Positions 18,931 to 41,014 of a stretch of 64,000 nucleotides of DNA are shown here, one piece after another. Numbering within the stretch: the stretch's first letter is position 1; each line of letters begins with the position of its first letter. The position numbers and the translations under genes are program-made. Location: IMG/VR virus record IMGVR_UViG_3300042889_001272, positions 124,001-188,000 of that record; one strand, given 5' to 3'. A model generated the notes under the pieces. The model saw only the letters and a list, made by a program, of their open reading frames with translations, was not told the DNA's origin and did not search any database.

Positions 18931-18951
18931 TACTAAATACGTATGAATTAA

Positions 18952-19296
18952 ATGTTCATACTCATGTCAATAAAACCTGCTTGCCTTAATAAAACAACAA
19001 GCCCATTTGTGAAATCAGACGGGTCACTTCTTCCATGTTGTTGGGCAAGTACTAGTTCTGACACTATTAAATTTCTAGGCAAAGAAAAATATTCACAATT
19101 AAATTTATATCATCATACTGTTGATGAAATTTATTCATCTGATGCTTATAAATTAATAAAATCAAAAATATTAGGCGAAAATCCTTTTGATATATGCAAA
19201 CAGTGGTGTAATGTGTTGCGGCGATCACAGCGACAAGACTACTTCATAGATTCATCGGAAATAGATGACTACATTAATAAGTATATTACTTTATAA
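18952..19296 (+). CDS. stand-alone SPASM/twitch-type Fe-S domain protein
   Basis: C-x8-VKSDGSLLPCCW...NL....DEI...CKQWC; ACTAAATA motif at 18932-18939. Confidence 0.7.
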   Translation: MFILMSIKPACLNKTTSPFVKSDGSLLPCCWASTSSDTIKFLGKEKYSQLNLYHHTVDEIYSSDAYKLIKSKILGENPFDICKQWCNVLRRSQRQDYFIDSSEIDDYINKYITL

Positions 19297-19300
19297 TTTT

Positions 19301-19972
19301 ATGTATAAATTAAAGACCCAAGTAATAGAATTAGAACTAACTTCAAAATGCACACTGCTATGCCCTGAATGTGCTAGAACCATGGATAAAGAAGAAACTA
19401 AAAACAAATGGAATTTTGGTGAGTTAGATATAGAAATTATAGAAAAATTGGCCAGCCAAACTCCTTACATAAGAACATTTAATTTTTGTGGTGGTTACGG
19501 TGATCCAATTTATCATAGCAGACTATTTGATATAATTGATATTTGCCATCGTTATAATAAATCAATTCACATAGAAACTGCGGGCAATCTTAGAAGCAAA
19601 GAATGGTGGAATAAATTGTCATTAATCCTCGGTGAACGCGATTCTATTTGTTTCAGTGTAGACGGATTAAAACATAGTAATCACATTTACAGAATAAATT
19701 CCAATTGGGATAGCATATTGAATGCCATGACTATCATGAGTGAATCATCATGCCATACGAAATGGAAATGGATATTGTTCAAATCTAATCAAGATGATGT
19801 TTTGGAAGGTTACAAATTAAGCAAGAAACTTGGTATTAAAAAATTTGAGCTAGTGGAAAGCGGTAGAATAACTCCGGGGAATGAGCCTACTAAATCAGTA
19901 AAGCAGATTTTAGCAGAGTTAAGAGAATATAACGAAACACAAGGACTTGACAACTATATTATTTTAAAGTAA
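19301..19972 (+). CDS. radical SAM protein (core only; likely start 19301)
   Basis: CTLLCPEC, CGGYGDP, IETAG, FSVDG, KWKWILF. Confidence 0.88.
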   Translation: MYKLKTQVIELELTSKCTLLCPECARTMDKEETKNKWNFGELDIEIIEKLASQTPYIRTFNFCGGYGDPIYHSRLFDIIDICHRYNKSIHIETAGNLRSKEWWNKLSLILGERDSICFSVDGLKHSNHIYRINSNWDSILNAMTIMSESSCHTKWKWILFKSNQDDVLEGYKLSKKLGIKKFELVESGRITPGNEPTKSVKQILAELREYNETQGLDNYIILK

Positions 19973-19975
19973 AAT
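19947..19975 (+). promoter_or_regulatory. sigma70-type promoter for thyX
   Basis: TTGACA-N17-TAAAAT. Confidence 0.65.
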
Positions 19976-19997
19976 AATACTTTTAAAGAAGTTATAA

Positions 19998-20882
19998 ATG
20001 ACACTAAGAACAGAAATTAATTTTGAAACAGATAAGAACTATCTTCCAGTATTGGATCATGGTTTTGTAGGTCTTGTTGACTACATGGGCAGTGATAGCG
20101 CCATCGTTCAAGCCGCTCGTGTTAGTTATGGTGCTGGGACAAAACAAGTTCAAGATGATAGAAACCTAATCCGGTATCTAATGCGTCACGAACATACTAC
20201 ACCTTTTGAAATGTGTGAGGTAAAGTTCCACATTAAACTTCCTATCTTCGTTATGCGACAGTTGGTACGTCATCGTACTGCCAGCATGAACGAATACAGT
20301 GCTCGTTATAGTGTGCTTACAGATGAGTTTTACATTCCCGAACTAGAACAAATCCAAAAGCAAAGCACAAGTAACAAACAAGGGCGTGAAGATGCCGAGT
20401 GGGGCTTTGAAGAAAAGCGTGGCGTTCAACATGCCTTCCAACGTAGCTTTCATAATGCATACAAAGAATATGCAAGTTTGCTAGGTAAGGAAGATTCTGG
20501 ACTAGCACGTGAGTTGGCTAGAAGTGTGCTTCCGGTAGGCGGATATACAGAATTGTATTGGAAAGCCAACTTGAAGAACTTTTTACACATGGCTCGCTTG
20601 CGTATGGATCCACATGCACAATGGGAGATCCGTGAGTTTGCAGGTGCTATGTATAACTTGGTTAAACCTTTGTTCCCAGAGGCTTGCGTGGCATTCGAGG
20701 ACTACGCTGTTAACTCAGTTAAGTTGAGTACTGGAGAATATCAGCTTGTTAAGAGTTTAATCAGCAAAGAAAAATGGGCTACTATGGTTACAAAATACGG
20801 CAATGACGAAAAAGCCCTGGGACAAGACGTAGGGCTTGGTGCTCGTGAACTCAAAGAGTTTAAAGAAAAATTAGGCTTGTAA
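19998..20882 (+). CDS. thyX: FAD-dependent thymidylate synthase
   Basis: AARVSY, HTTPFE, RQLVRHRTASMNEYSARY, ARSVLP, HAQWEIR. Confidence 0.97.
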   Translation: MTLRTEINFETDKNYLPVLDHGFVGLVDYMGSDSAIVQAARVSYGAGTKQVQDDRNLIRYLMRHEHTTPFEMCEVKFHIKLPIFVMRQLVRHRTASMNEYSARYSVLTDEFYIPELEQIQKQSTSNKQGREDAEWGFEEKRGVQHAFQRSFHNAYKEYASLLGKEDSGLARELARSVLPVGGYTELYWKANLKNFLHMARLRMDPHAQWEIREFAGAMYNLVKPLFPEACVAFEDYAVNSVKLSTGEYQLVKSLISKEKWATMVTKYGNDEKALGQDVGLGARELKEFKEKLGL

Positions 20883-21425
20883 AGGATCAACGCTGATTTC
20901 ATTTATATGAAACTCAGCGGGTTGTTCTAAAATCCATTTAATATAACTAGCCGCACCCTGAATAGGAATTGTTTTCCTGTCAGGGTGTTTTGCTTGTACA
21001 TTACTTAAACTGCCAAAGCTAATTAATGTGACTCTGGGGTTCTTTGCCCAGACTCCGGACATGCCTAGACTATTAGCGTAATCGCGCAATGCTTTCTTTT
21101 CAGCATTATAAAGCCAATCTGTGGCTTTCATCACTCTGTCAGTAGTACTACCTATACAAATAATCAAAGTTTGTTTGCCTGCTAGTTTAAGTTTCTTGTA
21201 TACCGCTTCGAGTAGCAAAACTTGATTAAACTTCCATAATGCACTATTAATAATTACTGCATCATAATCAACACTCATCTCGGCAAATACTTGTTGATTC
21301 TCTGCTTTAGTTAAATCTAAATCATGAGTTGTTCTACTTACAAATGTTAATTCATGTTGTGTTAACTCTAAATTTAGTGCCTCTGCTAGACCAAAATCTG
21401 GATTACCTGATATTAATATTTTCAT
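20871..21425 (-). CDS. short-chain dehydrogenase/reductase-like protein
   Basis: ILISG..FGLA Rossmann start, IINSA, IGS, YxxxK (YNAEK). Confidence 0.7.
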   Translation of the reverse strand: MKILISGNPDFGLAEALNLELTQHELTFVSRTTHDLDLTKAENQQVFAEMSVDYDAVIINSALWKFNQVLLLEAVYKKLKLAGKQTLIICIGSTTDRVMKATDWLYNAEKKALRDYANSLGMSGVWAKNPRVTLISFGSLSNVQAKHPDRKTIPIQGAASYIKWILEQPAEFHINEISVDPLQA

Positions 21426-22588
21426 AAGAATGTTGTATCTCCTGGGAACAAAGGTAATTTAGTGCCTGGCGCACGTTTTGGAATCTTACTGTCAGCACTA
21501 CTCACACAACTTGTTCCGCCACAGGGCATTGGTTTATCGTATAACTTGAAGCCGGTTTCGATATGTCCTAATGGAACTTCACTACAACTGTAACTACGTT
21601 TTACTGTGCCATCTGGTTCGCGGATAATAATACTTCGATAGCCACTGCTACACTCCCAACCATTGAAGTTGTTAAAGTTGAATGCGTTAAAACGTTCTGC
21701 CTGATCCATGAACCATGGATTTCCTTCTTTATCAACAAATTCGATTTGATAATGAGGGTCAACATCGACTTGTTTTTTACGACTAGGATCGGCTCTATCA
21801 ATTATAAAAGTAGGTTTTGGACGTTGAACAAGGCCTGCGGCTAATGCTTTTTCTTCTGTGTAAGCACGTTGTGGCATACCATTGTGTAACTTAGCCAACA
21901 TCTCGGGTGTATAACCATCTACTACACGGCTTGCTGTGGGATCGCTTTGTGGCTTGAGTGTAACGTTAATACCTCTATTATGAAAGTATAAACTTAGATC
22001 ATAAATCTCGTTGAACTGCTCTGGAACCATGACCATGTTGATAGTAATCTGAGTGTCATATTCTTGACACAAGACTAACTTGTCAGCAAACTCTTCAACC
22101 TTCTTATCAGTGTCGACGTGTTCACGATGACAACTTGCTGTGATACTAGCACGATGGAAGTGCTTGACTGCTGGTACATACTTTTCTTCAAACCATTTAA
22201 TCGGTCGACTCATGTTACTGGTCATATGTACACTAGTATAGTTTGTGTTAGCCGCATCATTGTTTAAGTGATTAAGGATATCAATGTACGCAGGATGGAA
22301 TGTGGGTTCTCCGCCACTTAAACTAAAGTGGAAACTATTAAATCCATTTTCTCTTGCTTGACGTTTGATCTCGTCCACAGTATGCAACATCAAAGGAGTG
22401 GGACGATGATCTTTAGTATCACTGCGAGCATAAGGCCAGCAATAACTGCAACGATAGTTACAGTAGCGTCCTAGTAGCCACGATACGGTAAACATATCGC
22501 GGTATAGCATTGTTCTTTGTCCAACTCTAACTAGATCCTTAAACGGAATCTTAGTAAAGTCATAATCACTGGTTTTTAAATCACTCAT
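21422..22588 (-). CDS. radical SAM protein with C-terminal SPASM/twitch
   Basis: CNYRCSYC, SGGEP, TSN; WECSSG...DG...C...CVSSAD. Confidence 0.92.
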   Translation of the reverse strand: MSDLKTSDYDFTKIPFKDLVRVGQRTMLYRDMFTVSWLLGRYCNYRCSYCWPYARSDTKDHRPTPLMLHTVDEIKRQARENGFNSFHFSLSGGEPTFHPAYIDILNHLNNDAANTNYTSVHMTSNMSRPIKWFEEKYVPAVKHFHRASITASCHREHVDTDKKVEEFADKLVLCQEYDTQITINMVMVPEQFNEIYDLSLYFHNRGINVTLKPQSDPTASRVVDGYTPEMLAKLHNGMPQRAYTEEKALAAGLVQRPKPTFIIDRADPSRKKQVDVDPHYQIEFVDKEGNPWFMDQAERFNAFNFNNFNGWECSSGYRSIIIREPDGTVKRSYSCSEVPLGHIETGFKLYDKPMPCGGTSCVSSADSKIPKRAPGTKLPLFPGDTTFL

Positions 22589-22811
22589 TTTGTTCGTAGA
22601 TAAATTTTACGTCCTTGCCCGGACCGACTTCGCTGGGCATGCCACCGTATTGCTTGACATACCATTCTATGGCTGCGATGTACCAACCTTGACTGTTATG
22701 TCTACTTTCTTTGTTAAAAATATATATATTGTCGTTGGTTGCTGGCATCGTACTTATAATGCGGGCCGCTTCTAATTGTAATTTGCGTAATGGAAGATCT
22801 TGTATATTCAT
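22581..22811 (-). CDS. hypothetical protein
   Basis: 76 aa, overlaps both neighbours. Confidence 0.65.
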   Translation of the reverse strand: MNIQDLPLRKLQLEAARIISTMPATNDNIYIFNKESRHNSQGWYIAAIEWYVKQYGGMPSEVGPGKDVKFIYEQNE

Positions 22812-23785
22812 TATACATATTTATTTTTTGTTGCCATCAAATCTGGCATACACCAACAAGTGTTATAGGGACAGATTACTCCGGAAGTAGGTAAGTTCAT
22901 AATATTTGATTCTTTCCAATTACCAAAATCTTCGTCTGTGCCTATCATACATCCACTACCCCTGCGTATTGTGCCATTGGCATCAAGTGTTATTTTATCA
23001 ACTCCTATACCACAGCTCCAATCTTTAAATTTGTTTTGTTCATCCACAAGTATCTGTCCTGTGACTTCTTGCAAGCGTTGTTGCCTCAAATATGTAAAAC
23101 TAGACTTATATATACTCTTTCTGGACTTGGCTACTTTTCTGTTTGCTTGTATATAGTTCATTTGTTCTTGTGTATATAATACTTTACTATCTGCAACAGC
23201 TTCGTATCTGTTATCCACTAATTTTAATTCGAGACTGGTAAACTCTTTGACATTGTTTAATATGTACTCGCGAGCTTCGAGTACCTTATCCCAAACTGCT
23301 GGCCAAGCAAGAATCAATATAGTCTTATATTCATTGTCCAATGCATTTATACTTTCCACAAACTTTTCTACACTTTTGACCTGTGTAGGATGATAACTGA
23401 ACACCACCGAAGATACCTGTGTACCTATTCTACGCCAATAATCTTCAGGCATTACTCCATTGGTAATAAATTTAATATTACTATCTGGACTATTTTTTTT
23501 AATTATATCTATAGCTTCGGGTAGTTTTTTCCATATAGCAAGTTCGCCGCCCAGTAATGTATATTCAAGGCGCCGACTTTTTCCATAATGTGATTGTAAC
23601 TCGCGTGTAGTGTAATCAATGCTGTCTAAACTAGGCCAGCCAAAACTACCATCATGTATTATGCTGGGACAATATTCGCAGGCATAGTTACATACGTTGG
23701 TCATTGTCCAATCAATGATTACCCAATCAGGATCTGCCTGTATCCTATCAAACAGTAAAGTTTTCATATAATTCCGGGCAGACAT
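22811..23785 (-). CDS. radical SAM protein with C-terminal SPASM/twitch
   Basis: CNYACEYC, LGGE, ITNG; WSCGIG...C...CPYNTCWC. Confidence 0.92.
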   Translation of the reverse strand: MSARNYMKTLLFDRIQADPDWVIIDWTMTNVCNYACEYCPSIIHDGSFGWPSLDSIDYTTRELQSHYGKSRRLEYTLLGGELAIWKKLPEAIDIIKKNSPDSNIKFITNGVMPEDYWRRIGTQVSSVVFSYHPTQVKSVEKFVESINALDNEYKTILILAWPAVWDKVLEAREYILNNVKEFTSLELKLVDNRYEAVADSKVLYTQEQMNYIQANRKVAKSRKSIYKSSFTYLRQQRLQEVTGQILVDEQNKFKDWSCGIGVDKITLDANGTIRRGSGCMIGTDEDFGNWKESNIMNLPTSGVICPYNTCWCMPDLMATKNKYV

Positions 23786-28221: not shown

Positions 28222-28224
28222 TAA

Positions 28225-29532
28225 TTATTTCCCTGTAAATTTTTCTTTTCTTTTTACATCTAATATTTCATTGAATTTTTGAAACTTTTCGAAACTTACG
28301 TCATATTTATTTGTATCTATACACTCGTCTATCCAGCTTATTGCGTCAGCTATATGTCTCTTATTATTGATTTCTCTAATAGAATTTTCTTGCATTGATT
28401 CAAACTTTACAATCAACTTTGACTTTGCCGCTGTCAGCCTTTCTATTGGCAGAACATTTGCATGTAAAAAAGTAGGCCATTGTAAACGGCTTGTATGCCA
28501 CATTATGTCAAAGTCAGTGTCTATTGCTTCAAATGTTTCAACTAAGTACTCTACATTAAGTGCAGATATGCAAGTACTTGCCTTTATGTAATCTAACTTA
28601 TCACCCAAACTTTCTTTGGACTGTTGTATGTTTTCTTTTATGTCGTTCCATACAGAACCGTGTCTAATATAAGCATTAAGTTCGTCGTAGCCATCTATAC
28701 TGATTGTTAAACGCACCGACTTGAATTTTTTCCAAAGGTCCAGTACATTGCGACCTTTCTTTGCTTCGAGATCTGTTAAATTTGTACTGTATTTTAAAAT
28801 AACGTCACTGGGATCCTTGATACGATCCAGCATATTGTAATGCAACGGATCCATTAAAGGCTCGCCTCCGGCAAATTCGAATTCCTTGATATCATCGATG
28901 ATCTCATACAAGTCCTGCACAAATGTATTGTGTGTCTCAAATAAATTTAACACAGGTTTTTTACGTAAGTCATTGCTGTCGATGATATTATTAATATACT
29001 CCCGTTCTCCAGGTTCATAAATTTCTTTAACAGCATCCCAGTCTTGTAGCCACGGTGTACTGTCCTTGGGCCAACACATACGGCATTTTAAATTACAAAG
29101 ATTGCTTAATTTAAACTCGACAATAGGAATATTCCATGGTGATTCTTTTGTGCGTTTATATGTTGCAACTAAATGTGCATACTCTTGTGTTCTCTCGTAA
29201 TTTTGACTTTGTCTTAAACTGGTAATACCTTTGTCTTCCATTGACCAGCAAGCATTGCAATGAGGATCTCTAATACCTGATATTAGATTATTTCTGACTA
29301 TTTTATATTTTTTATGATTCCAAAGATCTCGGAATGCTATATTTTTAATATCCCAGATTTTAGTACTTCGACAGCACAGTCTAAACTCGCCATTGGTTGT
29401 GGTACTTGTGTGTATAAACGGCATTATGCAAAATGTCTTATCATCTACATCAAAACCATGCTGTTCTTTAAATAACTCGCTGGGTCTATAATCTAACAGG
29501 AATTGTTTTCCTTTTCCTTTAGCTTCATTCAT
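28225..29532 (-). CDS. radical SAM protein with N-terminal twitch-like domain
   Basis: CIMPF...LCC...CNAC; CNLKCRMC; AGGEP; YSTN. Confidence 0.93.
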   Translation of the reverse strand: MNEAKGKGKQFLLDYRPSELFKEQHGFDVDDKTFCIMPFIHTSTTTNGEFRLCCRSTKIWDIKNIAFRDLWNHKKYKIVRNNLISGIRDPHCNACWSMEDKGITSLRQSQNYERTQEYAHLVATYKRTKESPWNIPIVEFKLSNLCNLKCRMCWPKDSTPWLQDWDAVKEIYEPGEREYINNIIDSNDLRKKPVLNLFETHNTFVQDLYEIIDDIKEFEFAGGEPLMDPLHYNMLDRIKDPSDVILKYSTNLTDLEAKKGRNVLDLWKKFKSVRLTISIDGYDELNAYIRHGSVWNDIKENIQQSKESLGDKLDYIKASTCISALNVEYLVETFEAIDTDFDIMWHTSRLQWPTFLHANVLPIERLTAAKSKLIVKFESMQENSIREINNKRHIADAISWIDECIDTNKYDVSFEKFQKFNEILDVKRKEKFTGK

Positions 29533-29863
29533 TGCTGATCCTTAATCTCTTAATATTATTTAATTCTGCTTTACTCAGCTGTATGTCGGCGGCGCAGGTA
29601 CAATTTTCTTTGGTACAAATAATGGGCTCAGTGGGCACCGAGAAGCCGGTGTGTATATCTCCTAGCTTGCCGCCCACCTTACATATGGCTCTCCAAACAT
29701 TGCCGTCATTGTCTATGGTCAAATTCTGAACGCCTGCCCAGCACATCCAACCTTTGAATTTGTTCGTTTCGTTGGCCAGTAAATCATTGACATTGCTTTC
29801 TTCGCTGGTGCCGTCTTCATAATGAACTACTATGTTTGCCCAATTAGTTACTTTACTTGTCAT
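29525..29863 (-). CDS. SPASM/twitch domain; C-terminal half of a split radical SAM gene
   Basis: WMCWAG...DG...C...CTKENCTCAAD; matches the C-terminus of paralog 22811-23785. Confidence 0.75.
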   Translation of the reverse strand: MTSKVTNWANIVVHYEDGTSEESNVNDLLANETNKFKGWMCWAGVQNLTIDNDGNVWRAICKVGGKLGDIHTGFSVPTEPIICTKENCTCAADIQLSKAELNNIKRLRISNE

Positions 29864-30561
29864 TTTTTCTTATTCAACATAAAATCAAGTTCTTCTTGAG
29901 TATAGTAGTCATCTTTACATTTACCGTGCGATGTTTTTAATCCACTTAATCCCGGAACTGCCCAGATTTTTGTCTCAGGATCCAGCCTAGGTCTAATTCT
30001 TCTAATTACCCAATGCACATCATTTTCATTCATGATGTCGATTATCTCATTTGCTTCCGCCATTTTACCTGGAAGATACATCAAGTGGGTGTGTAGGTTT
30101 TGATTCTTGCGCTCTTTAACAAGTTTATTTAACTCTACGATAGTGTTAATTATCTTGTCGTGATATGCAAATTCAAAATGATAACTAAAAATATAATAAG
30201 TAATATACGGTAAACTATCAATATATTTTTGAAGTGGAACACTGCCGTTAGTAGTGACACTAATTTTATTAATACCATTGTTCTTTATTATTTTAAGAAT
30301 GTCGATAATTTTTGGATGCACAAATGGTTCGCCGCCAGTTAAACTGATACGGCATTCTTTACCCTGTGATCGAGCAACATCTGCTATCTGCTTGACTGTT
30401 TTTTCAATGACATCTAAACTTAAATGCTGACTTTCTCTGTCATGTATGTCGCTACCACAGTAGCTACAATCATAGTTACAACGTTTACCTAGATTCCATT
30501 CAATGCGTAGCCATTTGTCTTTAGGCGCATGATTGTCTTCTACCGCAACCAGTTTATTCAT
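29860..30561 (-). CDS. radical SAM core; N-terminal half of a split gene
   Basis: EWNLGKRCNYDCSYC, TGGEP, TTNG, SYH. Confidence 0.9.
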   Translation of the reverse strand: MNKLVAVEDNHAPKDKWLRIEWNLGKRCNYDCSYCGSDIHDRESQHLSLDVIEKTVKQIADVARSQGKECRISLTGGEPFVHPKIIDILKIIKNNGINKISVTTNGSVPLQKYIDSLPYITYYIFSYHFEFAYHDKIINTIVELNKLVKERKNQNLHTHLMYLPGKMAEANEIIDIMNENDVHWVIRRIRPRLDPETKIWAVPGLSGLKTSHGKCKDDYYTQEELDFMLNKKK

Positions 30562-33106
30562 TCCAATAATCCGTTAATTCGGGTATAACATTCAATACGT
30601 TTTCCTTTCGAATTTTATCCAACTCTACAGTGAATTGTTTGAATGTATTCCACTGTGTTTCGTGAATTCTATTAGATTCCAAACTACGAACTAATACCTC
30701 AAAGTCGGGTATTCCATACAATTGATCTACCATCTTTTTTCTTAGTTCAGTAGGTAGTACCAATGGACTCAGATACATCGGACTATTACATACAGTCTCG
30801 AATGCATTTGATGCACTAACTTTTTCAAATTTTTCTTCCCAACTTTTTAATTTTTTATGCAACGATTTTAGATTTAATAAATTATAGGCTTGCATAGTAA
30901 CATTAAATCCAATCTCAACGTTGGGTAATTTATTATACATGCTTATTACATCTTCTAGTTCGTCAATAGTAAACTTACCGCCACGTATATAACTATACAG
31001 TTCACCCGTTCCTTCCACACTGAACATTAAACGTACATTTTTAAATTTTTCAAGCATAGATAAAATCTTCGGATTAACGATCGTGCCATTAGTTGTGTAC
31101 TGCAAAGTGATAAATTCATTTTTCCCATATTTGATGAGTTCTTCCAAGTAGGGCACATGATTTTTTGCCATCATAGGTTCCCCTCCCTTAAAGTCTATAC
31201 GCTGTATATGTTTCATATGTCTTATAGGTTCTAATAGACTACTTAATTCTTGTTGAACTATTACTTGTTTTTCTGGATTATTTTCCTTTTCAAATTTAGG
31301 ATTAATTTTTGCCAACATCAAGTCTTCCTCAAACCATTGATTACTGGCCCATGAGCCACACATACGACATTTTAAATTACATACGTTACTAAGATTGACA
31401 TCCATCTGAGTCCAAAATAATTTCTCTTTGGTCAAAGGACGGGTATAATCATAGTCACTGGGTATTCCATTTGTAAACTTTTTGTTAAACCATTGTCTTC
31501 TACTGGTTCCTATTAAATTCTCACGTTCCCAACAACTGCTACATTCTTCTGGTTTTTCTCCTTTGAGGAACTGATTTCTTATTTTTATAATTTTTTCATT
31601 ATTAATAAAACTATCTACAATATTATCCTTACTGGCTGTTCCTAGAGACCCTTTAAACTGACAGCAAGGTTTAATATTATCATTGGCACTTATTGCAAGG
31701 CCGTGCCATGGCATTTTACAGAAGCTTTCATACTTTTCGCGTCGATATTCATTAAAATAAATTTCATAGTTACTGTAAATTTCTGGATCTAATTGTTCGA
31801 GACTTTCACCGCGTATTTCATCTAGCTCGTATGTATATTTGACAAATTCTTTAGGACCTTGCTTTGCAAGTCCCTTAACTTCAATTGGATTGTCTATTAA
31901 ATCTTCCAGTAATTTTTTTATGTCATTGATATATCTTGCTTCTGTTATAGCACTTTTGCCATTTTGGTCGCCGCGAAAAAAATCATATTTGTCAATAAGA
32001 TAATTTATTTGATCAAGACTCTTTTGCAGTATTTTTCCATTTAACCATTGTACGTGCAAAGTTTTGGGCCCTACTAATATTCTGTGCTCCATACTATGAC
32101 GATGTTTGCTACTTGTTACCGGCTTTTCTTTATCCCAGCCATAAAATTTAATTATCCATTCGATAAATTCTGCAACGTTTAATGCATTAATGGCTTGGAA
32201 GGTCCCGTTAATGTTCATTTTATAAACGCCTGGCCTCGGTTTGTCACACCAATTTCTAATTAATTCTGCCTTCTCTATAATGCCATCCCAATCTATGGCG
32301 CCTGCACTTCTAATATAGCTGAAATATCCTCTAGTACCATCTAAACTAAGATTGATGTTGACATACTTAAAACCTTCCAATGCTTCTAGATGCTTTTCTG
32401 TGATAACGCTACCATTAGTAGTAATCATTAATTCAATTTGTTTGTCCAAGCCAGCATCACGCAACATGCCCAGGAATTCCATGAATTGCGGCACAAGGAA
32501 TGGTTCACCACCTAATATCTCCACACGACGTAAATCCTTGCCATTATCCACTAATTCTCGCAACTGCTCTGTAGACAATGTATGTTTTGTTCTATCAAAC
32601 ATAGAACTTGTTCTAGCATAAGGACTGCCGGCTCCGCCTGATGCAAAGCCACGTTTTTTAAGTTTTTCCTCGTCACCTATCCATGCGTTGCTATATGCAC
32701 TGCTACACATTCTACATTTAAAATTACACAAGTTATTAAAAGCAATATCCAAGTGTACAAGTTTATTACCCGTTAGATTATTATCCCAATCAATATCTTC
32801 CCACCGATCGTCAATTACATCCAGATTCTGCCAGTGAGTACGTTTGCTGGTTACATTTTTATCTTCCTTGCTTTGACAATTTTGGCAACCCAGTGTCCAT
32901 TCTCCGTTGCGTTGGTCTTTTCTTAGATCTTGAAATGATTTGTTGTCCCATTGTTTAATAATAGAACCACTGTTAACATCACCCATTTCTGTTTCGCTCA
33001 TATGGCAGCGAACCATTTTTCCAGTAGCATGTATTGCAATGCTACTAACAGGTAGCATACATATTGTAGGACTCAGTAGTTTATTTTTATCGCCTTGTTC
33101 ACTCAT
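30554..33106 (-). CDS. tandem double radical SAM protein (two twitch-rSAM units, 850 aa)
   Basis: Unit 1 CMLP..C..CQNC / CNFKCRMC / LGGEP; unit 2 CKMPW..PCC..CSSC / CNLKCRMC / KGGEP. Confidence 0.93.
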   Translation of the reverse strand: MSEQGDKNKLLSPTICMLPVSSIAIHATGKMVRCHMSETEMGDVNSGSIIKQWDNKSFQDLRKDQRNGEWTLGCQNCQSKEDKNVTSKRTHWQNLDVIDDRWEDIDWDNNLTGNKLVHLDIAFNNLCNFKCRMCSSAYSNAWIGDEEKLKKRGFASGGAGSPYARTSSMFDRTKHTLSTEQLRELVDNGKDLRRVEILGGEPFLVPQFMEFLGMLRDAGLDKQIELMITTNGSVITEKHLEALEGFKYVNINLSLDGTRGYFSYIRSAGAIDWDGIIEKAELIRNWCDKPRPGVYKMNINGTFQAINALNVAEFIEWIIKFYGWDKEKPVTSSKHRHSMEHRILVGPKTLHVQWLNGKILQKSLDQINYLIDKYDFFRGDQNGKSAITEARYINDIKKLLEDLIDNPIEVKGLAKQGPKEFVKYTYELDEIRGESLEQLDPEIYSNYEIYFNEYRREKYESFCKMPWHGLAISANDNIKPCCQFKGSLGTASKDNIVDSFINNEKIIKIRNQFLKGEKPEECSSCWERENLIGTSRRQWFNKKFTNGIPSDYDYTRPLTKEKLFWTQMDVNLSNVCNLKCRMCGSWASNQWFEEDLMLAKINPKFEKENNPEKQVIVQQELSSLLEPIRHMKHIQRIDFKGGEPMMAKNHVPYLEELIKYGKNEFITLQYTTNGTIVNPKILSMLEKFKNVRLMFSVEGTGELYSYIRGGKFTIDELEDVISMYNKLPNVEIGFNVTMQAYNLLNLKSLHKKLKSWEEKFEKVSASNAFETVCNSPMYLSPLVLPTELRKKMVDQLYGIPDFEVLVRSLESNRIHETQWNTFKQFTVELDKIRKENVLNVIPELTDYWNE

Positions 33107-34373: not shown

Positions 34374-35841
34374 TGTTAAATATATCCTTCATTTCAGAAA
34401 AAGTTTCGTAAAAACTAGTGCCACGGTGCTCGTCTATTTTTTCCAAATACTCTTTCATTTCCGGTAAACGTACACTCCAGTCTTCACTTTTCATGAATCT
34501 AATTAGGCCGCGCAGACGCTTGACGCCGTAGTCATTTGCAAGAAACACGTCTTTGTCCAATGTTTCACTTTGCTTGACTCCGTTCATATAGTTGTCGGTC
34601 CACCAAGGTATTAATTCTTCTTCTATCTTACGTGCAACTTCGTCTTTAAATTTCTCAGGAAGAACTTTGACATTTAAGAATGCAGGCCAATATACAAAGT
34701 GGAAATTAATACCACCTGCACCCAAAGGCCACATGTTGATCTTCTTAAAGTTTTGTGTCATTTTCCACTTAATAAATTCAGGCAAGTAATGAATGTTCAA
34801 TGCGTTAACGGCACAAGCCACTGTGACTTCTACGTTGTCAGTTGTCTGCGTATCTAATATATGAAATACTTCTTCTGTGCGCTTCCATTCACTGGGGTAA
34901 CGAATATACTCGTTGTGTGCGCCAAAAGAATCGACACTGTAATGAAAACGTACAAGTTTAAAGTGACTCCATAGTTCAAATAAGTCCTCTCTCCACTCTA
35001 CACCATTGCTATTATAACGTATTTCCATGTCTTTTGCAACCCCTTGTCGAATACATTCTTCAAGGATAGCATAGTGTTCTTCGATGATCAATGCTTCGCC
35101 TCCGGCAAAGTATAGTTGTTTCATGTGAGGAATTTGTTGATAGAACTGTTCCCAGAACACTGGATTGTTCTTATGCCAATTGTAGCTACTGCCATTGGTA
35201 CTGCCTTTGTTTTCCCAGTTCCAAATTTCTTTTACTTTATCATTTTCAATCTTAGGGTAAACTGCTTGCCAGTCTTTGATCCAACCACTACTGTCGTGCG
35301 GGCTACACATGATACAGGCTAGCTGGCATTTTGTTCCGAAGCGTAAGTCAATATATCGTAGTTTAGGCGGAACACTGCCATCTTCACTGGTTTCTTGTAC
35401 TAGTTCGTCGATGCTTACTCGCTTGCTCCAATATTCTGTTTCCCATTGGCGTTTACTTCTATGACCTGCGGCCTCTTCTTTATAACACTTTAAACAGCTT
35501 GAAGGCTTTTCACCCACCATCATTTGTGAGCGTACATTTTTCATATATGTACTGTTCCAGCTGGATTCGAAGTCCGCAACATTTAAGTTGTTGGGACGGC
35601 CTTCTTCGTCTTTTAAAATTCCAATATTGCCGCCATGTAGTTTTTCATTGGTAGCGCCTACTGAACTGGCATTGGCAGTACAACATACTCGCATTTGGCC
35701 ATCGGGACGAGTACTTAAATGTATCCAAGGTAAAATGCACCATGTTTTACTAACATTGAGATGATTTTTTGTTTGGGAAGTTCGGTCTTTGTTAACCATC
35801 ATGTCTTCGCCGGATTCGTTGGGCATAACGTTGTCGATCAT
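34366..35841 (-). CDS. radical SAM protein with N-terminal twitch-like domain
   Basis: CILPW...VCC...CLKC; CQLACIMC; AGGE; YNSNG. Confidence 0.93.
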   Translation of the reverse strand: MIDNVMPNESGEDMMVNKDRTSQTKNHLNVSKTWCILPWIHLSTRPDGQMRVCCTANASSVGATNEKLHGGNIGILKDEEGRPNNLNVADFESSWNSTYMKNVRSQMMVGEKPSSCLKCYKEEAAGHRSKRQWETEYWSKRVSIDELVQETSEDGSVPPKLRYIDLRFGTKCQLACIMCSPHDSSGWIKDWQAVYPKIENDKVKEIWNWENKGSTNGSSYNWHKNNPVFWEQFYQQIPHMKQLYFAGGEALIIEEHYAILEECIRQGVAKDMEIRYNSNGVEWREDLFELWSHFKLVRFHYSVDSFGAHNEYIRYPSEWKRTEEVFHILDTQTTDNVEVTVACAVNALNIHYLPEFIKWKMTQNFKKINMWPLGAGGINFHFVYWPAFLNVKVLPEKFKDEVARKIEEELIPWWTDNYMNGVKQSETLDKDVFLANDYGVKRLRGLIRFMKSEDWSVRLPEMKEYLEKIDEHRGTSFYETFSEMKDIFNNV

Positions 35842-37100
35842 TTTTTTAATTTCTCATATAATTGTGGAAAAGTTGTCTTCCAGTCTGTGTTTCTAATGGC
35901 ATCTAATTTTGTTACTATATCTAAACATTTATCAACTAGGCCTGAGTTGCCTTCTATATTTGTTTCTAAATAATTTACAAGATGTGCTATTTGTTTTTTC
36001 TTTTTGTCAGTTGTTGCCCACGCATTATATTTAATTAAAATATCCTGTTTTACTTCTAGTGGAAGTATTGCAACATCGAAATAATCCGGACTGCTTAAGA
36101 TTCTAACACTGGAGTTGTGTTTTTCAAATTGATCAAAATAATCTAATAAATTGGGTGTTGTGTATACACTTAAAACTTGCCACGTTACTGTGAAATCCAT
36201 TTTGATGTTAGACATTTCTTTACTTAATGTGTTTACATTCTTACTTATTTGCTGCCATGTGGCGGGGAAACGAATATATTCAAACTGATCACCAAAATCA
36301 TCTATACTAATACGTAGCCAAACTTTTTTAAAATGTTTCCACAAATTCAAGGCACGTTTGTGTATAGCAGTTAAATTTGTATCATATTCCAAAGTAACTT
36401 CGCCGGCTCTGCCACTGTCAATAACTTTTTGCAAGAAATCATAATGGGGTTCGATCAGCATGGGTTCGCCGCCCACAAGATATACTTGCTTCAAATACGG
36501 AATCTTTGCTTCTAATTTGGTCCAAAACTCTGGGTTATCCCACCAATCATATTCACCAGCATCCCTATATCTACCATCAACATCTTTTAAATTGATCTTT
36601 GTTCCACTGTCAGTGAACTTGGTTGTACCATTAAGTAAAACATAATCTTCATACCACTGACTGCTACTGGCAGGATGACACATGACACATTTTAAATTGC
36701 ACAAGTTACCAAAACGTAAATCCCAGTAACTAGGTTGCCAATCTGTGTTACCGTGTTCATCTGTATGCTGTCTAGCAATGTCTACATCAAACTCGCCATC
36801 ATACATCTTATTACTCACAGTTCTACGACTGCTTGCACCCATGTCTTCTTTGACCCAGCAGGTATTACAGTCGCTGTGACGCTGATCAGCAAGCATGGCC
36901 AATCTTATTTCTCTAGCTTTGTCGCCATTTTTAATAACGTCAAAGTCATCGCGGCCGAGATTGTAGGGCTTACCATTATTATCTCTTATTGTGCCTTGTT
37001 GACTGTCTTTACTATTGGTCATCAAGCAACAAACCCTGGCAGTGCCAATGGGCTTTGCTGCCATTTGCACCCAAGGTATAACACAAAATGTTTTATCCAT
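35838..37100 (-). CDS. radical SAM protein with N-terminal twitch-like domain
   Basis: CVIPW...VCC...CNTC; CNLKCVMC; VGGEP; YDTN. Confidence 0.93.
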   Translation of the reverse strand: MDKTFCVIPWVQMAAKPIGTARVCCLMTNSKDSQQGTIRDNNGKPYNLGRDDFDVIKNGDKAREIRLAMLADQRHSDCNTCWVKEDMGASSRRTVSNKMYDGEFDVDIARQHTDEHGNTDWQPSYWDLRFGNLCNLKCVMCHPASSSQWYEDYVLLNGTTKFTDSGTKINLKDVDGRYRDAGEYDWWDNPEFWTKLEAKIPYLKQVYLVGGEPMLIEPHYDFLQKVIDSGRAGEVTLEYDTNLTAIHKRALNLWKHFKKVWLRISIDDFGDQFEYIRFPATWQQISKNVNTLSKEMSNIKMDFTVTWQVLSVYTTPNLLDYFDQFEKHNSSVRILSSPDYFDVAILPLEVKQDILIKYNAWATTDKKKKQIAHLVNYLETNIEGNSGLVDKCLDIVTKLDAIRNTDWKTTFPQLYEKLKK

Positions 37101-38055
37101 TGAAATATTTCTTTGCTAAATGTTTTGCAAACTTCTCATGTACTTCTTTGTTAAAGTGAAATCCAGAAGTAAATGATTTATGATCTTTATCCATCATTCT
37201 TGCCATGGAGTCTATGCCGTTGGGAAACAATGATAATATCGTTCTGCCTAAATATGTTTCAGGATTTGGATTATCAATATCCATAGTCTGTTGGACATCG
37301 TTACATCCTTCATTGACTGTAGTATATTCTATTTCAAAAAATAAAGAATCAACCATTATTACTTCTATACCCAATGCTCCTTGTATTGCATTTTTATACA
37401 TATTCACCGTTGACAAATAATTCAATAGTCTAGAATTCGACCACATATCAAGTTCTAATGCTTGACGATTATCTGTTGATAGGAAAAACTTTTCAGCTAC
37501 AGAATAGTTATCAGCTATACTACTTCCTTGATTTAATGACCTAACAAAAAATTCATTATCTAATTTATTATGATCCAAATAGGCAGGTCTGTATATGTCG
37601 TAGGAATCATACCTAAATTCTTTTATATAAGCATGTCTTGTTCTACATGTGAACTGAATTATTGCTTTTTTAACATCTATTCCTTGTTTTCTTAGATTAT
37701 ATATATCATTGCATGTTCTTAAATAAATGCCATAGTTATCGCTGCCTGGGGCAGATTTATTGATAATTGTAGTGTCAGTGATGTCTTCCAGCAATGCTGC
37801 CCAATTTAATTGTTTCATTAATCTATTAGTTTTGCCTGCAAAATTTAATTCAGTGGTGCCTGGAACTATTTCTGCATATTTTAAATTTCTCCAATTCAAA
37901 TACTCAAATACTTTATCTCCAGCTAAGTTGTTGTTGAAGCAATGTTTAACGTCATTGAATGATAACTCTTCTGGATATCCGTCCAAAATGTAATCGGCTA
38001 TGTCTACTCCGTTGGTAAAACTACATCCGTTTACGTAAATTACTGCGCTCATCAA
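37093..38055 (-). CDS. SGNH/GDSL-like protein
   Basis: VNGCSFT, NKSAPGSDN, C-terminal HFNKEVHEKFA. Confidence 0.55.
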   Translation of the reverse strand: MMSAVIYVNGCSFTNGVDIADYILDGYPEELSFNDVKHCFNNNLAGDKVFEYLNWRNLKYAEIVPGTTELNFAGKTNRLMKQLNWAALLEDITDTTIINKSAPGSDNYGIYLRTCNDIYNLRKQGIDVKKAIIQFTCRTRHAYIKEFRYDSYDIYRPAYLDHNKLDNEFFVRSLNQGSSIADNYSVAEKFFLSTDNRQALELDMWSNSRLLNYLSTVNMYKNAIQGALGIEVIMVDSLFFEIEYTTVNEGCNDVQQTMDIDNPNPETYLGRTILSLFPNGIDSMARMMDKDHKSFTSGFHFNKEVHEKFAKHLAKKYFNG

Positions 38056-38936
38056 AAATACCTTTCTGAGATTTTTTTAGCAAACCTGTCATGTATTTTA
38101 GCGGTAAAATGTAGGCCCGCTGTAACAGTTGCTGGTTCATTTAAATCTATGCAATCCAACATACTTAATTTAATTTCATCATCTAATTGTTTTTTAAAAT
38201 CCAGCAAATAGTCATCTTTATTTTTAGTTAACCAATCGGGGTGTAATAATTCAAAAGGTTTTTTGCCAAAAATAGAGTTAGGATAACATGCACTATCCAC
38301 TAAAATTAATCTAGCACTGGTAATTGATGCTATTGCATGTTTAAACATATACATATTATATAACCAACGATATACTGACATTTCATAATGTTCGTTGTTG
38401 TTAAGATCGTCGATTACATCTGCATCCGATATCGGATTAATACTTTTTATATGGTAGTAATAATCATTTCCGTTATAACGCTGTGGTTCTTCACGGTCAT
38501 GAGTTTCTTTAAAAAAACTGTATCTAGATGGTGATGTTACTTGTATTAATATATCTGTTATATTATAACCTTGTTTTTGCAATCTATGTAAATCTGCCAA
38601 GGTCCTGTGAATTATAGCACACATGCTACTGCCGCCGTGACTACTTAGATTATGAACCGGTTTACCTAATTGTTCACTGAGTTTATTAGACCATCTATTA
38701 TTAACTTCAAACTGTGCTATTTCTTTAGCTAACAGTTTATCGTTGATATGTTTATTGAAATTATATTTTTGATCGAGCGCAGATATTTGATTGGCTCGAA
38801 TGATATCAGAATCTGCGCTTGTTATTTCCTGTAAACTGTAATATTGTTTAAAAAATGGATATAAATGATCTGCTAGATCACATCCTTCTGTGAAGCTATC
38901 CCCATTAACATAAATGATATCTTTACCTTGGGTCAT
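38052..38936 (-). CDS. SGNH/GDSL-like protein
   Basis: VNGDSFT, NLSSHGGSS, C-terminal HFTAKIHDRFA. Confidence 0.6.
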   Translation of the reverse strand: MTQGKDIIYVNGDSFTEGCDLADHLYPFFKQYYSLQEITSADSDIIRANQISALDQKYNFNKHINDKLLAKEIAQFEVNNRWSNKLSEQLGKPVHNLSSHGGSSMCAIIHRTLADLHRLQKQGYNITDILIQVTSPSRYSFFKETHDREEPQRYNGNDYYYHIKSINPISDADVIDDLNNNEHYEMSVYRWLYNMYMFKHAIASITSARLILVDSACYPNSIFGKKPFELLHPDWLTKNKDDYLLDFKKQLDDEIKLSMLDCIDLNEPATVTAGLHFTAKIHDRFAKKISERYF

Positions 38937-39276
38937 AGTCGTCCCACTTGACAGCGTTTTCCATTTGAAATTTATAATTTGATATTAGTCTTTCGAATGT
39001 CTCTATTGTAAAGCGCAAATTAAAGTTGCCGCCGTGTGTGTTAATTGTAAAACGCACAGCTGATATATTGCGTTTAATAACAACATACATTTTTATACCG
39101 CATTTCAACTGCAAATTAATACCTTCCCTGGTATTAGCACCTGCAAACATTTGTTTTATCTCGTCGTGCGTTAATCGGTAAGTTAACACAAAGTTATCGT
39201 TTACACGTAAACTTAGATCATTGATATCATATTTTTTGTATGCATATAACTTTAAATCTTCATCAAATGGTTTCAT
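38923..39276 (-). CDS. hypothetical protein
   Basis: 117 aa ORF packed in the operon. Confidence 0.65.
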   Translation of the reverse strand: MKPFDEDLKLYAYKKYDINDLSLRVNDNFVLTYRLTHDEIKQMFAGANTREGINLQLKCGIKMYVVIKRNISAVRFTINTHGGNFNLRFTIETFERLISNYKFQMENAVKWDDYDPR

Positions 39277-39280
39277 AATA

Positions 39281-39607
39281 TTATTTAAACAACACTGTTT
39301 TATGATTAAGCATCTCTATTCTTTCATTGCCTGGTTCCCGCTTGGTGCATAACAATCTGCAAATTGGCAATGGATTATCTGATTGAACCATTGTTCTTAT
39401 ATTTGCCCAGGCCTGTGAATTCGTTATTTCTTCGTAGGAATAATTATTTAAATTTAGTTGGGCATACAACTCTTCGCCTAGAAATTTTTCTAATTCACCA
39501 TTAGTAGTAGTATAACAACAAGGAGAGTATGTACCACTTGCTCGTACAAAGAAAATATTTTTAGTCTTATAGCATTCTGGATCTAGTTGCATTTTGTCCT
39601 TCTTCAT
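39281..39607 (-). CDS. stand-alone SPASM/twitch-type domain protein (paralog of 18952-19296; start possibly 39592)
   Basis: C...VRASGTYSPCCY...FLGEELYAQLNL...CRLLC. Confidence 0.72.
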   Translation of the reverse strand: MKKDKMQLDPECYKTKNIFFVRASGTYSPCCYTTTNGELEKFLGEELYAQLNLNNYSYEEITNSQAWANIRTMVQSDNPLPICRLLCTKREPGNERIEMLNHKTVLFK

Positions 39608-40235
39608 GTACGTAATTATTTAATTCCGAAATTACTTCTTCCAAACTTCTGTCGGGTTTGTATCCAGGGGGATACTCTCTTCCACTGCTAACTACTAAGA
39701 ATTCGCCCACGCCCAGCTGTCGACTTAATTTGTATCCTTCTATGCCATCATTTTCATTGTATTTAAAAATTATCCATTTCCATTGTATATCAGCCAGTGA
39801 CAGAGAAGTCATAATTTTAATACCTGTTTCAATGCTGGACCATTCCGAATTCACCCTGTATAAATCTTTGCCGGGCAAGCCATCTATACTGAAGACAAAC
39901 ATGTCTCTCTGTTCGAACAAAGGAGCCAACGTCGTCCACCAAGCGGCATTTCTATAACTACCATTGGTGTTCACAGTTATTTGCTTGTCAGCCTTTTTTA
40001 CAAGTTTGATTATTTCAGCAAATTTTGTATGATATATAGGATCACCATATCCTCCGGAAAATATAACTGACTTAATACTTGGCACCTGCATCATTTTTTC
40101 AATGACAGCAATGTCTAGTTCGCCGTATTTCCATTTGTGTTTCTTTTCGTCTGGATCCCTAGTCCGCGGGCATTCTGGACAAAATAGTGTACACTTGCTG
40201 GTTATTTCCAATTCTAAGCGCGACGGGTCAGTCAT
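39567..40235 (-). CDS. radical SAM protein (core only; paralog of 19301-19972)
   Basis: CTLFCPEC, SGGYGDP, NTNG, FSIDG, QWKWIIF. Confidence 0.9.
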   Translation of the reverse strand: MTDPSRLELEITSKCTLFCPECPRTRDPDEKKHKWKYGELDIAVIEKMMQVPSIKSVIFSGGYGDPIYHTKFAEIIKLVKKADKQITVNTNGSYRNAAWWTTLAPLFEQRDMFVFSIDGLPGKDLYRVNSEWSSIETGIKIMTSLSLADIQWKWIIFKYNENDGIEGYKLSRQLGVGEFLVVSSGREYPPGYKPDRSLEEVISELNNYVHEEGQNATRSRML

Positions 40236-41004: not shown

Positions 41005-41014
41005 GATTTTTCCT

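What the first reader, a model, noticed from the sequence alone, without database searches (positions are those of the whole stretch)
18952..40235. Duplicated two-gene module (rSAM core plus free SPASM gene), inverted and with gene order swapped
Seen: 19301-19972 and 39567-40235 are clear paralogs (ELELTSKCTLLCPEC...KWNFGELD vs ELEITSKCTLFCPEC...KWKYGELD). So are 18952-19296 and 39281-39607 (PCCW...FLGKEKYSQLNL vs PCCY...FLGEELYAQLNL). Copy 1 is on + as SPASM then core, inserted before thyX. Copy 2 is on - as core then SPASM. A fused relative sits at 41015-42190. Keeping both halves together through a rearrangement suggests an obligate two-subunit enzyme whose Fe-S domain works in trans (inference).
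Basis: partly seen in the sequence, partly recalled or inferred. Interest (0 to 1): 0.6.

Follow-up and report, generated by a model that had tools for sequence, protein, structure and literature searches.

The report
Split radical SAM enzyme, two copies
A lake phage carries two old copies of a radical SAM enzyme whose iron-sulfur "twitch" domain is a separate small gene next to the catalytic gene. The pairing is conserved across many phages and Bdellovibrio-like bacteria, so this is very probably a natural two-piece enzyme.

Summary
The two cores are 46% identical (E 3e-72) and the two small Cys-rich ORFs 37% (E 7e-22). The gene order is swapped and the strands are opposite.

The small ORFs are twitch-type domains: four invariant Cys, so one auxiliary cluster rather than the seven-Cys SPASM. 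They are encoded apart from a radical SAM core that ends just after helix alpha6.

The split is old and selected:
- Core-only proteins form a large clade nested among fused relatives.
- In all 21 non-redundant loci examined, a twitch ORF abuts the core.
- All four window ORFs have dN/dS of 0.13-0.26.
- Core and twitch trees agree, so the pair duplicated as a unit.

Twitch-then-core order arose twice. Copy 1 is a 1,076-bp accessory cassette. In 80 thyX loci it was present whole or absent whole, never as one half.

A complex prediction for core2 with twitch2 scored ipSAE 0.83 against 0.01 for the best control. The frame offset between the halves varies among orthologues, and RNA-library contigs are colinear with the DNA. 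Both argue against a frameshift-made fusion.

The substrate is unknown. The family also occurs in Bdellovibrionota genomes. I rate it a new variant of a known kind, of moderate interest.

The parts
18952..19296 (+). twitch1: free-standing twitch-type auxiliary Fe-S domain protein (114 aa) of copy 1
   Evidence: Pfam SPASM 25.3 bits against a cut-off of 21.5. It has the four invariant Cys. It is 37% identical to twitch2. dN/dS is 0.26 against L010.
19265..19972 (+). core1: radical SAM core-only protein of copy 1. It is 235 aa from the ATG at 19265, or 223 aa from the ATG at 19301, which lies 4 nt after the twitch1 stop.
   Evidence: It carries a CxxxCxxC motif. Pfam Radical_SAM 31.1 bits against 29.5. 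It is 46% identical to core2. Junction sequence. dN/dS 0.20.
18920..19995 (+). Copy-1 cassette: a 1,076-bp segment holding exactly twitch1 and core1, between a 103-aa gene and thyX
   Evidence: It is absent with clean breakpoints (window about 18917-18919 joined to 19996-19997) in all 8 relatives aligned, whose thyX is 78-93% identical. Of 80 thyX loci, 5 have both genes, 75 have neither and none has one.
39567..40235 (-). core2: radical SAM core-only protein (222 aa) of copy 2
   Evidence: It carries a CxxxCxxC motif at residues 15-22. Pfam Radical_SAM 33.3 bits. Residues 7-195 align to residues 6-197 of the fused relative P0047. dN/dS 0.14-0.15.
39281..39607 (-). twitch2: free-standing twitch domain protein. 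The ORF starts at 39607 (108 aa). The likely start is the ATG at 39592 (103 aa), which overlaps the 3' end of core2 by 26 nt in another frame.
   Evidence: Pfam SPASM 31.8 bits. Orthologues begin at the residue matching 39592, and a GAAGGA lies just upstream. Residues 8-32 align to P0047 residues 220-244. dN/dS 0.13-0.18. Predicted to bind core2.
38923..39276 (-). P0094: a highly conserved 117-aa protein directly after twitch2. It is fused in frame to the twitch in several relatives and is a possible third component of copy 2.
   Evidence: It is 68-87% identical across loci where the twitch is 40-75% identical. Natural twitch-P0094 fusions of 222-231 aa exist. A 1-nt indel at 39292 makes the difference. 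The fold is Whirly/PUR/MRP-like, Z 7.6-8.7, and is only a lead.
41015..42190 (-). Fused paralogue (391 aa): radical SAM core plus C-terminal twitch in one chain
   Evidence: Core HMM 167 bits at residues 9-209 and twitch HMM 86 bits at residues 282-385. It sits in a separate all-fused clade.

Best explanation
Each module encodes a two-subunit twitch-type radical SAM enzyme.

The larger gene gives the partial TIM-barrel core with the CxxxCxxC cluster that cleaves SAM. The small gene gives the twitch domain, which uses four invariant Cys to hold one auxiliary Fe-S cluster. The two genes abut or overlap, so they are probably translated in a coupled way (inferred).

The twitch protein is predicted to dock by adding its beta-hairpin strand to strand beta1 of the core. 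That would rebuild the architecture that fused relatives have in one chain.

The family arose from a fused core-twitch enzyme that was split in the linker after helix alpha6. The pair was later duplicated as a unit within this phage lineage. One copy had its gene order swapped and became a small accessory cassette in front of thyX. The other copy stayed in the large radical SAM island.

Shown here: paralogy, conserved adjacency, joint gain and loss, purifying selection, descent from fused forms, and a strong predicted interface.

Inferred: actual binding, cluster content, the catalytic need for the twitch subunit, and the substrate. My guess for the substrate is a small sugar- or nucleotide-type molecule or a peptide, as for the structurally nearest enzymes.
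For: - Paralogy.
- Domain identity.
- Core-only proteins of about 205-246 aa have no C-terminal Cys, whereas fused proteins of about 290-390 aa have 5-7.
- The split proteins form a clade of 47 nested among fused ones. Both window cores lie in a starred 40-row subclade. A tree with added loci gives the same picture.
- The halves are adjacent in every locus examined.
- The twitch-then-core group is one clade in both the core tree (100/99) and the twitch tree (85/92).
- Relatives G001 and G002 hold both copies plus the fused paralogue in the same layout.
- Copy 1 is present or absent only as a unit.
- dN/dS is 0.13-0.26 for all four ORFs.
- The Cys spacing C-x17-C-x52-C-x3-C is the same in free and fused forms.
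- The two halves tile the fused protein without loss.
- Complex prediction: ipSAE 0.86/0.83/0.81 in three runs against a best control of 0.01. That mark was reached by 58 of 80 solved complexes and 2 of 110 mismatched pairs. The runs agree in at least 89% of contacts, and the partner pLDDT is at least 76. The counts hold only roughly, because I supplied my own alignments.
- No close solved homologue exists by sequence, so the pass is not memory of a near relative.
- The fused relative folds as a SPASM/twitch radical SAM enzyme. The best matches are BlsE, SuiB, SkfB, CteB, anSME, MoaA, DesII and BtrN.
Against: - There are no biochemical data of any kind.
- The complex score may reflect the model's knowledge of intramolecular core-twitch packing in fused enzymes. 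It shows likeness, not binding.
- In some close relatives twitch2 is fused to the downstream protein P0094. The twitch may therefore have a partner other than, or besides, the core.
- In marine loci L034, L039 and L042, two core-only radical SAM genes precede a single twitch gene.
- In L033 the twitch ORF lacks a canonical start before its first Cys.
- The substrate and reaction are unknown. All NCBIfam equivalog hits are far below their cut-offs.
Confidence: 0.75

Rival explanations
1. The small Cys-rich protein is an independent Fe-S electron carrier or adaptor, ferredoxin-like. It would serve several radical SAM enzymes of the island, or P0094, rather than being a dedicated structural subunit of the neighbouring core.
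For: - Natural fusions of twitch2 to P0094 occur in several assemblies.
- Some marine loci have two core-only radical SAM genes before one twitch gene.
- Published work shows that auxiliary clusters can mediate intermolecular electron transfer in PapB (PMC10470005).
Against: - Strict one-to-one adjacency and joint duplication with the core, and congruent trees.
- Copy 1 moves as a two-gene cassette far from the island.
- The predicted interface uses the hairpin strand that belongs to the canonical twitch fold (fold elements from PMC6231123).
- The ancestors are fused enzymes.
Confidence: 0.12
2. The two ORFs of copy 2 are joined into one fused protein during expression, by programmed ribosomal frameshifting or RNA-level correction in the overlap.
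For: The core2 and twitch2 frames overlap by 26-41 nt, and the homologous regions abut exactly.
Against: - The frame offset of twitch relative to core is +1 in the window, L001, L005 and L008, but -1 in L007 and L009.
- In L126 the two genes are in the same frame, separated by TAG then ATG.
- In copy 1 the order is reversed, so no shift can give the ancestral fusion.
- A start codon with a Shine-Dalgarno-like GAAGGA is conserved.
- Contigs from two RNA libraries cross the junction without any indel. DNA carry-over in those libraries cannot be excluded.
Confidence: 0.04
3. The split genes are decaying remnants of frameshifted fused genes, or an assembly error.
For: Fused relatives exist, including one 800 bp away (41015-42190). 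In L033 the twitch ORF lacks a good start.
Against: - dN/dS is 0.13-0.26 on all four ORFs.
- The split state is conserved over a clade of 47 clusters and in many independent assemblies from different studies.
- An independent DNA run reproduces the window sequence exactly across the junctions it covers (X9).
Confidence: 0.03

Closest known systems
Twitch-domain radical SAM enzymes (BtrN, BlsE, DesII, SkfB, MoaA)
   Same: - A radical SAM core with CxxxCxxC plus one auxiliary cluster domain.
- The Cys layout is one before a beta-hairpin, one after it and two after a helix. This is the layout given for BtrN in PMC6231123.
- The fused relative P0047 matches these structures at TM 0.5-0.63.
   Different: - Here the twitch domain is a separate polypeptide, encoded before or after the core.
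- Sequence identity to solved enzymes is only 11-18%, and no sequence-level PDB relative exists.
- The substrate is unknown.
SPASM-domain radical SAM maturases (anSME, PqqE, SuiB, CteB; Pfam PF13186)
   Same: The Pfam SPASM model hits both small ORFs above its threshold. SuiB, CteB and anSME are among the best fold matches for the fused relative.
   Different: SPASM is defined by seven Cys and two auxiliary clusters (PMC6231123). These proteins have four invariant Cys, five in total.
NCBIfam NF033640, N_Twi_rSAM (radical SAM proteins with an N-terminal twitch domain)
   Same: - The small ORFs align to profile positions 4-84 and the cores to about 112-272. The copy-1 gene order therefore mirrors this architecture.
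- At least six paralogues with an N-terminal twitch domain lie in the same window.
   Different: - Scores of 22-35 bits are far below the cut-off of 170.
- The cores of the window's N-twitch paralogues score only about 5-21 bits against the split-core HMM. They are not close kin.
- Here the two parts are separate proteins.
Accessory domains of radical SAM systems that occur either free or fused: PqqD, a standalone RRE, against the fused RRE of SkfB, SuiB and CteB. From my own knowledge also CofG/CofH against fused FbiC.
   Same: The same functional unit is found either as one chain or as neighbouring genes. PMC6231123 calls PqqD a standalone RRE domain.
   Different: Those cases involve a peptide-binding domain or a second radical SAM domain, not the auxiliary-cluster domain itself. 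I found no paper describing a free SPASM or twitch subunit. The library is incomplete, so this does not prove that none exists.

Membership tests
Radical SAM superfamily (PF04055) | [quoted passage not shown] | tested here: met
   The motif is at residues 29-36 of core1 and 15-22 of core2. C15, C19 and C22 are invariant in 14 sequences. Scores are 31.1 and 33.3 bits against a threshold of 29.5.
Radical SAM superfamily (PF04055) | Reductive cleavage of SAM | not testable with these tools
   This needs purified protein.
SPASM domain (seven-Cys motif, two auxiliary clusters) | The seven conserved Cys pattern CX9-15GX4C-gap-CX2CX5CX3C-gap-C | tested here: not met
   Only C12, C30, C83 and C87 are invariant, and C31 is nearly so. 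The fused relatives have four invariant C-terminal Cys. The motif definition comes from PMC6231123.
Twitch domain | One Cys before a beta-hairpin, one after it, then a helix followed by two Cys, together holding one auxiliary cluster | tested here: met
   The spacing C-x17-C-x52-C-x3-C is seen in free and fused forms. In the P0047 model, strands 230-233 and 238-240 lie between C224 and C242, and helices precede C295 and C299. This is met at the level of sequence and model only. Cluster binding was not measured.
Twitch domain | A C-terminal extension of the same polypeptide as the core | tested here: not met
   The ORFs are separate with their own starts. The frame offset varies and the order is reversed in copy 1.
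NF033640 N_Twi_rSAM | A score above the curated cut-off of 170 bits, with an N-terminal twitch and the core in one protein | tested here: not met
   Scores are 22-35 bits for the four proteins.
   All 21 non-redundant split loci have the two genes adjacent. Of 80 thyX loci, 5 have both, 75 have neither and none has one. Only a sample of the family was examined.
   The prediction supports binding: 0.83 against a best control of 0.01. It is a model, not a measurement.
Whirly/PUR/MRP-like fold (for P0094) | Two beta-beta-beta-beta-alpha repeats with a clear structural match | tested here: inconclusive
   The model has pLDDT 78. Foldseek gives E of 0.009 or worse. VIA-align gives Z 8.7-7.6 to MRP1/2, Pur-alpha, PBF-2, StWhy2 and SsgA over 102-110 residues, but a Z of 7-8 is common background.

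The most novel reading that the evidence does not exclude
The free twitch protein is a portable Fe-S module that evolution re-attaches at will. In this one lineage it is found in five states:
- C-terminal to a core.
- Free after a core.
- Free before a core.
- Fused to a Whirly-like protein (P0094).
- In other paralogues, N-terminal to a core.

On this reading the split pairs are living intermediates of the circular permutation that produced N-terminal-twitch radical SAM enzymes. The P0094 fusion would point to a nucleic-acid substrate for copy 2.
Probability: 0.15. Interest if true: 0.75.

Novelty: new variant of a known kind. Interest (0 to 1): 0.55.

Why it matters
The role of auxiliary clusters in SPASM/twitch radical SAM enzymes is still described as largely enigmatic (PMC10470005). 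It is hard to study because all clusters sit in one chain. Cluster-selective labelling currently needs special methods, as the title of PMC10337720 indicates.

A natural enzyme with the SAM cluster on one subunit and the auxiliary cluster on another would allow several experiments:
- Each cluster could be reconstituted, isotope-labelled or mutated separately.
- Two paralogous pairs in one genome give a built-in test of partner specificity.

The family also documents gene fission, order swap and re-fusion of a metallo-domain. It shows that the radical SAM islands of aquatic phages share enzyme families with Bdellovibrionota.

Tried and rejected
- Nucleotide search of both regions against isolated phages found nothing. 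A protein search found only distant radical SAM genes in Campylobacter CP220-like phages and Pelagibacter phage Mosig, and nothing for the twitch.
- The genes flanking the two copies are not paralogous, so the duplicated unit is two genes, not three.
- I asked whether the split pairs are close kin of the window's many N-terminal-twitch paralogues. They are not: those cores score only about 5-21 bits against the split-core HMM. A direct origin of that family from this clade is therefore not supported.
- The word-based search with the twitch alone found only 3 proteins. The profile search found 20. It is too insensitive for a census.
- P0094 has no hit in Pfam (apart from a sub-threshold DUF7009 match), PHROGs or the Atlas.
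- The promoter and terminator scan around copy 1 found no more sites than chance.
- Four literature searches found no description of a free SPASM or twitch subunit or of an N-terminal twitch. One review, PMC4326806, is not held.
- I did not use the exhaustive representative search, because the word search and family scans were enough.
- No alternative genetic code was used.
- Read laying was given 1,401 bases.
Full report
**Setting.** The window is bases 124001-188000 of a single 235,561-bp virus record with 38% G+C. Near-identical DNA occurs in lake and freshwater metagenomes from many studies. No isolated phage is close at the nucleotide level. The best thyX matches among isolates are about 50% identical.

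- Core1 and core2 are 46% identical over 209 residues (E 3e-72).
- The two small ORFs are 37% identical over 82 residues (E 7e-22).
- Pfam calls the cores Radical_SAM and the small ORFs SPASM, all above the gathering scores.
- The order is small ORF then core on the + strand before thyX, and core then small ORF on the - strand.
- The neighbouring genes are not duplicated.

**What the small ORFs are.** An alignment of 14 free homologues has four invariant Cys (C12, C30, C83, C87) and one nearly invariant Cys (C31). The spacing is C-x17-C-x52-C-x3-C. The fused relatives have the same four invariant Cys at the same spacing, at C224, C242, C295 and C299 of P0047. In the P0047 model a beta-hairpin lies between the first two Cys, and helices precede the last two. 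This is the twitch layout described for BtrN. It is not the seven-Cys SPASM motif (PMC6231123). NCBIfam's model of N-terminal-twitch radical SAM proteins (NF033640) aligns the small ORFs to its positions 4-84 and the cores to about 112-272, but far below its cut-off.

**The split is ancient and is not damage.**
- Among 88 database relatives of core2, those of about 205-246 aa have no C-terminal Cys. Those of about 290-390 aa have five to seven.
- On a tree of 85 cores, the core-only proteins form a clade of 47 (SH-aLRT 92) nested among fused ones. Both window cores lie in a starred subclade of 40.
- Core2 residues 7-195 align to residues 6-197 of fused P0047, and twitch2 residues 8-32 align to residues 220-244. 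The break therefore falls after helix alpha6, and nothing is missing.
- dN/dS is 0.14-0.15 for core2, 0.13-0.18 for twitch2, 0.20 for core1 and 0.26 for twitch1 at unsaturated distances.
- An independent DNA run reproduces the window exactly where it covers it (X9).

**The halves stay together.** I located core and twitch with HMMs in every fetched locus. The loci came from IMG/VR, public assemblies and species genomes. In all 21 non-redundant split loci a twitch ORF abuts or overlaps the core.
- Core-then-twitch order holds for the copy-2 kin (L001-L009, L029-L032), for deeper lineages (L034-L043), and for three Bdellovibrionota MAGs (L128, L129, L132).
- Twitch-then-core order holds for the copy-1 kin (L010-L012, L024-L028, L044, L045) and for a second clade (L033, and L126/L127 from a Bdellovibrionia MAG contig of 917 kb).
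- On a tree of 55 cores, twitch-then-core arose twice, each time as a starred clade inside core-then-twitch lineages.
- The core and twitch trees agree that the copy-1 group is one clade (100/99 and 85/92). The pair was therefore copied as a unit and its order swapped once.
- Relatives G001 (172 kb) and G002 carry copy 1 before thyX, copy 2 about 20 kb away on the other strand, and the fused paralogue, as in the window. Their copy-2 cores are only 67% and 58% identical to the window's. The arrangement is therefore old.

**Copy 1 is an accessory cassette.**
- Of 80 viral contigs with a thyX relative, five have twitch and core upstream, 75 have neither and none has one alone.
- The eight loci without the pair that I aligned have thyX 78-93% identical. 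In each, the sequence runs from window position about 18917-18919 straight to 19996-19997.
- The unit is thus 1,076 bp (18920-19995).
- I saw no flanking repeats.
- A promoter-like site matching 11 of 12 positions lies at its 3' end (19947-19975). The scan as a whole found no more sites than chance.

**There is no fusion by frameshift.**
- In the window, L001, L005 and L008 the twitch frame is +1 relative to the core. In L007 and L009 it is -1.
- In L126 the genes are in one frame, with TAG followed directly by ATG.
- Orthologues share a start that corresponds to the ATG at 39592, preceded by GAAGGA.
- Contigs from two RNA libraries cross the core2/twitch2 junction with no indel. DNA carry-over in those libraries cannot be excluded.

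**Predicted binding.**
- Core2 with twitch2, each given as a 14-row alignment, scored ipSAE 0.86, 0.83 and 0.81 in three runs. The best of three controls scored 0.01.
- This mark was reached by 58 of 80 solved complexes and 2 of 110 mismatched pairs. The counts hold only roughly because I supplied my own alignments.
- The runs agree in at least 89% of contacts, and the partner pLDDT is at least 76.
- The most confident contacts pair core residues 6-10 (strand beta1) with twitch residues 18-23, the first hairpin strand.
- The C-terminal tail of the twitch also touches the core. Its being near the core N-terminus would fit the existence of N-terminal-twitch fusions, but that is my inference.
- No close solved homologue exists by sequence. 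The model could still be recalling the general packing of fused enzymes.

**What the enzyme resembles.** The fused relative P0047 models at pLDDT 91.6. Its best PDB matches are BlsE, SuiB, SkfB, CteB, anSME, MoaA, DesII and BtrN, at TM 0.5-0.63 and 11-18% identity. This places it in the SPASM/twitch subclass but does not give a substrate.

**Surroundings.**
- Copy 2 lies in an island of about 41 kb on the minus strand with at least 13 radical SAM domains in 12 genes. With core1 the window holds 14 such domains in 13 genes. Counting genes outside the window, the genome holds 17.
- At least six of the island's genes show an N-terminal twitch or SPASM domain. One of them is an 850-aa double enzyme.
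- The island also has genes matching nitroreductase, Asp/Asn hydroxylase, carbamoyltransferase, aldolase, shikimate dehydrogenase and nucleotidyltransferase-kinase families.
- It ends at a tail-fibre-like gene and a 2,991-aa ORF.
- Radical SAM cassettes in the host-recognition cluster of T4-like aquatic phages have been noted before. So has a marine T4-like genome with 12 radical SAM genes (PMC7029224; PMC5332604). I did not test whether this phage is T4-like.

**A possible third part.** The 117-aa protein after twitch2 (P0094) is 68-87% identical across loci where the twitch is 40-75% identical. In L001-L005, L008 and database proteins P0098-P0100 it is fused in frame to the twitch. In the closest strains the difference is a 1-nt indel at 39292, also seen in an independent DNA run. 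Its model resembles the Whirly/PUR/MRP fold that binds single-stranded nucleic acids, but at scores near background. Copy 1 has no such partner.

**Verdict.** I found no published description of an auxiliary-cluster domain encoded apart from its radical SAM core, but the library is incomplete. I rate it a new variant of a known kind. The chemistry is probably ordinary twitch-type radical SAM chemistry. The architecture is unusual, widespread and experimentally useful.

Noticed in passing
window 29525-30561 (-) and 21422-22588 (-); L133:3579-4520: There is a second, unrelated split radical SAM enzyme. A 233-aa core (29860-30561) is followed by a 112-aa protein with five Cys (29525-29863). These match the N-terminal part (28% identity, E 3e-17) and the C-terminal part (34% identity, E 2e-9) of the fused 388-aa paralogue at 21422-22588. 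Both also match, in order, within the span of one 313-aa ORF of a Bdellovibrionia MAG. Both parts are conserved in marine loci but are not always adjacent there.
   Followed up: partly
window 21422-56652 (-): An island on the minus strand holds at least 13 radical SAM domains in 12 genes. At least six have an N-terminal twitch or SPASM domain, and one is an 850-aa double enzyme (30554-33106). Other genes match nitroreductase, Asp/Asn hydroxylase, carbamoyltransferase, GatZ-type aldolase, shikimate dehydrogenase and nucleotidyltransferase-kinase families. The product is unknown.
   Followed up: partly
window 39276-39295: A 1-nt indel at 39292 decides whether twitch2 and the downstream 117-aa gene are one ORF or two. 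Both states occur among strains about 98% identical and in more distant relatives.
   Followed up: yes
L126-L136 (species genomes): The only cellular relatives found are in Bdellovibrionota MAGs (Bdellovibrionia, Bdellovibrionales, Oligoflexia, Bacteriovoracaceae, Halobacteriovoraceae). They show fused, core-then-twitch and twitch-then-core forms, with N-twitch paralogues beside them. I did not test whether this reflects gene exchange with phages, prophages or binning errors.
   Followed up: partly
L033:296-637: In this twitch-then-core locus the twitch ORF has no ATG, GTG or TTG before its first conserved Cys. It may use an unusual start or be decaying.
   Followed up: no
window 19947-19975 (+): A near-consensus sigma-70-like site (TTGACA, 17 nt, TAAAAT) sits at the 3' end of the copy-1 cassette, just before thyX. 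The region as a whole has no more such sites than chance.
   Followed up: no
window 1866-2726 (+), 14939-16054 (+), 16456-17649 (+): Three other genes lie upstream of copy 1: a QueE-like radical SAM gene (PHROG 2076, E 2e-50), an ATPase (PHROG 1297), and a DUF2201 metallopeptidase/VWA protein.
   Followed up: no
window 61775-62713 (-) and 63366 to beyond the window end (-): A tail-fibre-like protein and a 2,991-aa ORF (genome 187366-196341) border the radical SAM island. The position recalls the host-recognition cluster described for pelagimyophages.
   Followed up: no
window 40252-41154 (-) against 41015-42190 (-): The longest ORF of the nitroreductase-like gene overlaps the 3' end of the fused radical SAM gene by 140 nt. 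Its true start is probably further downstream. In relatives L029 and L031 a 446-aa N-twitch radical SAM gene lies between this position and the split core, and the window lacks it.
   Followed up: no
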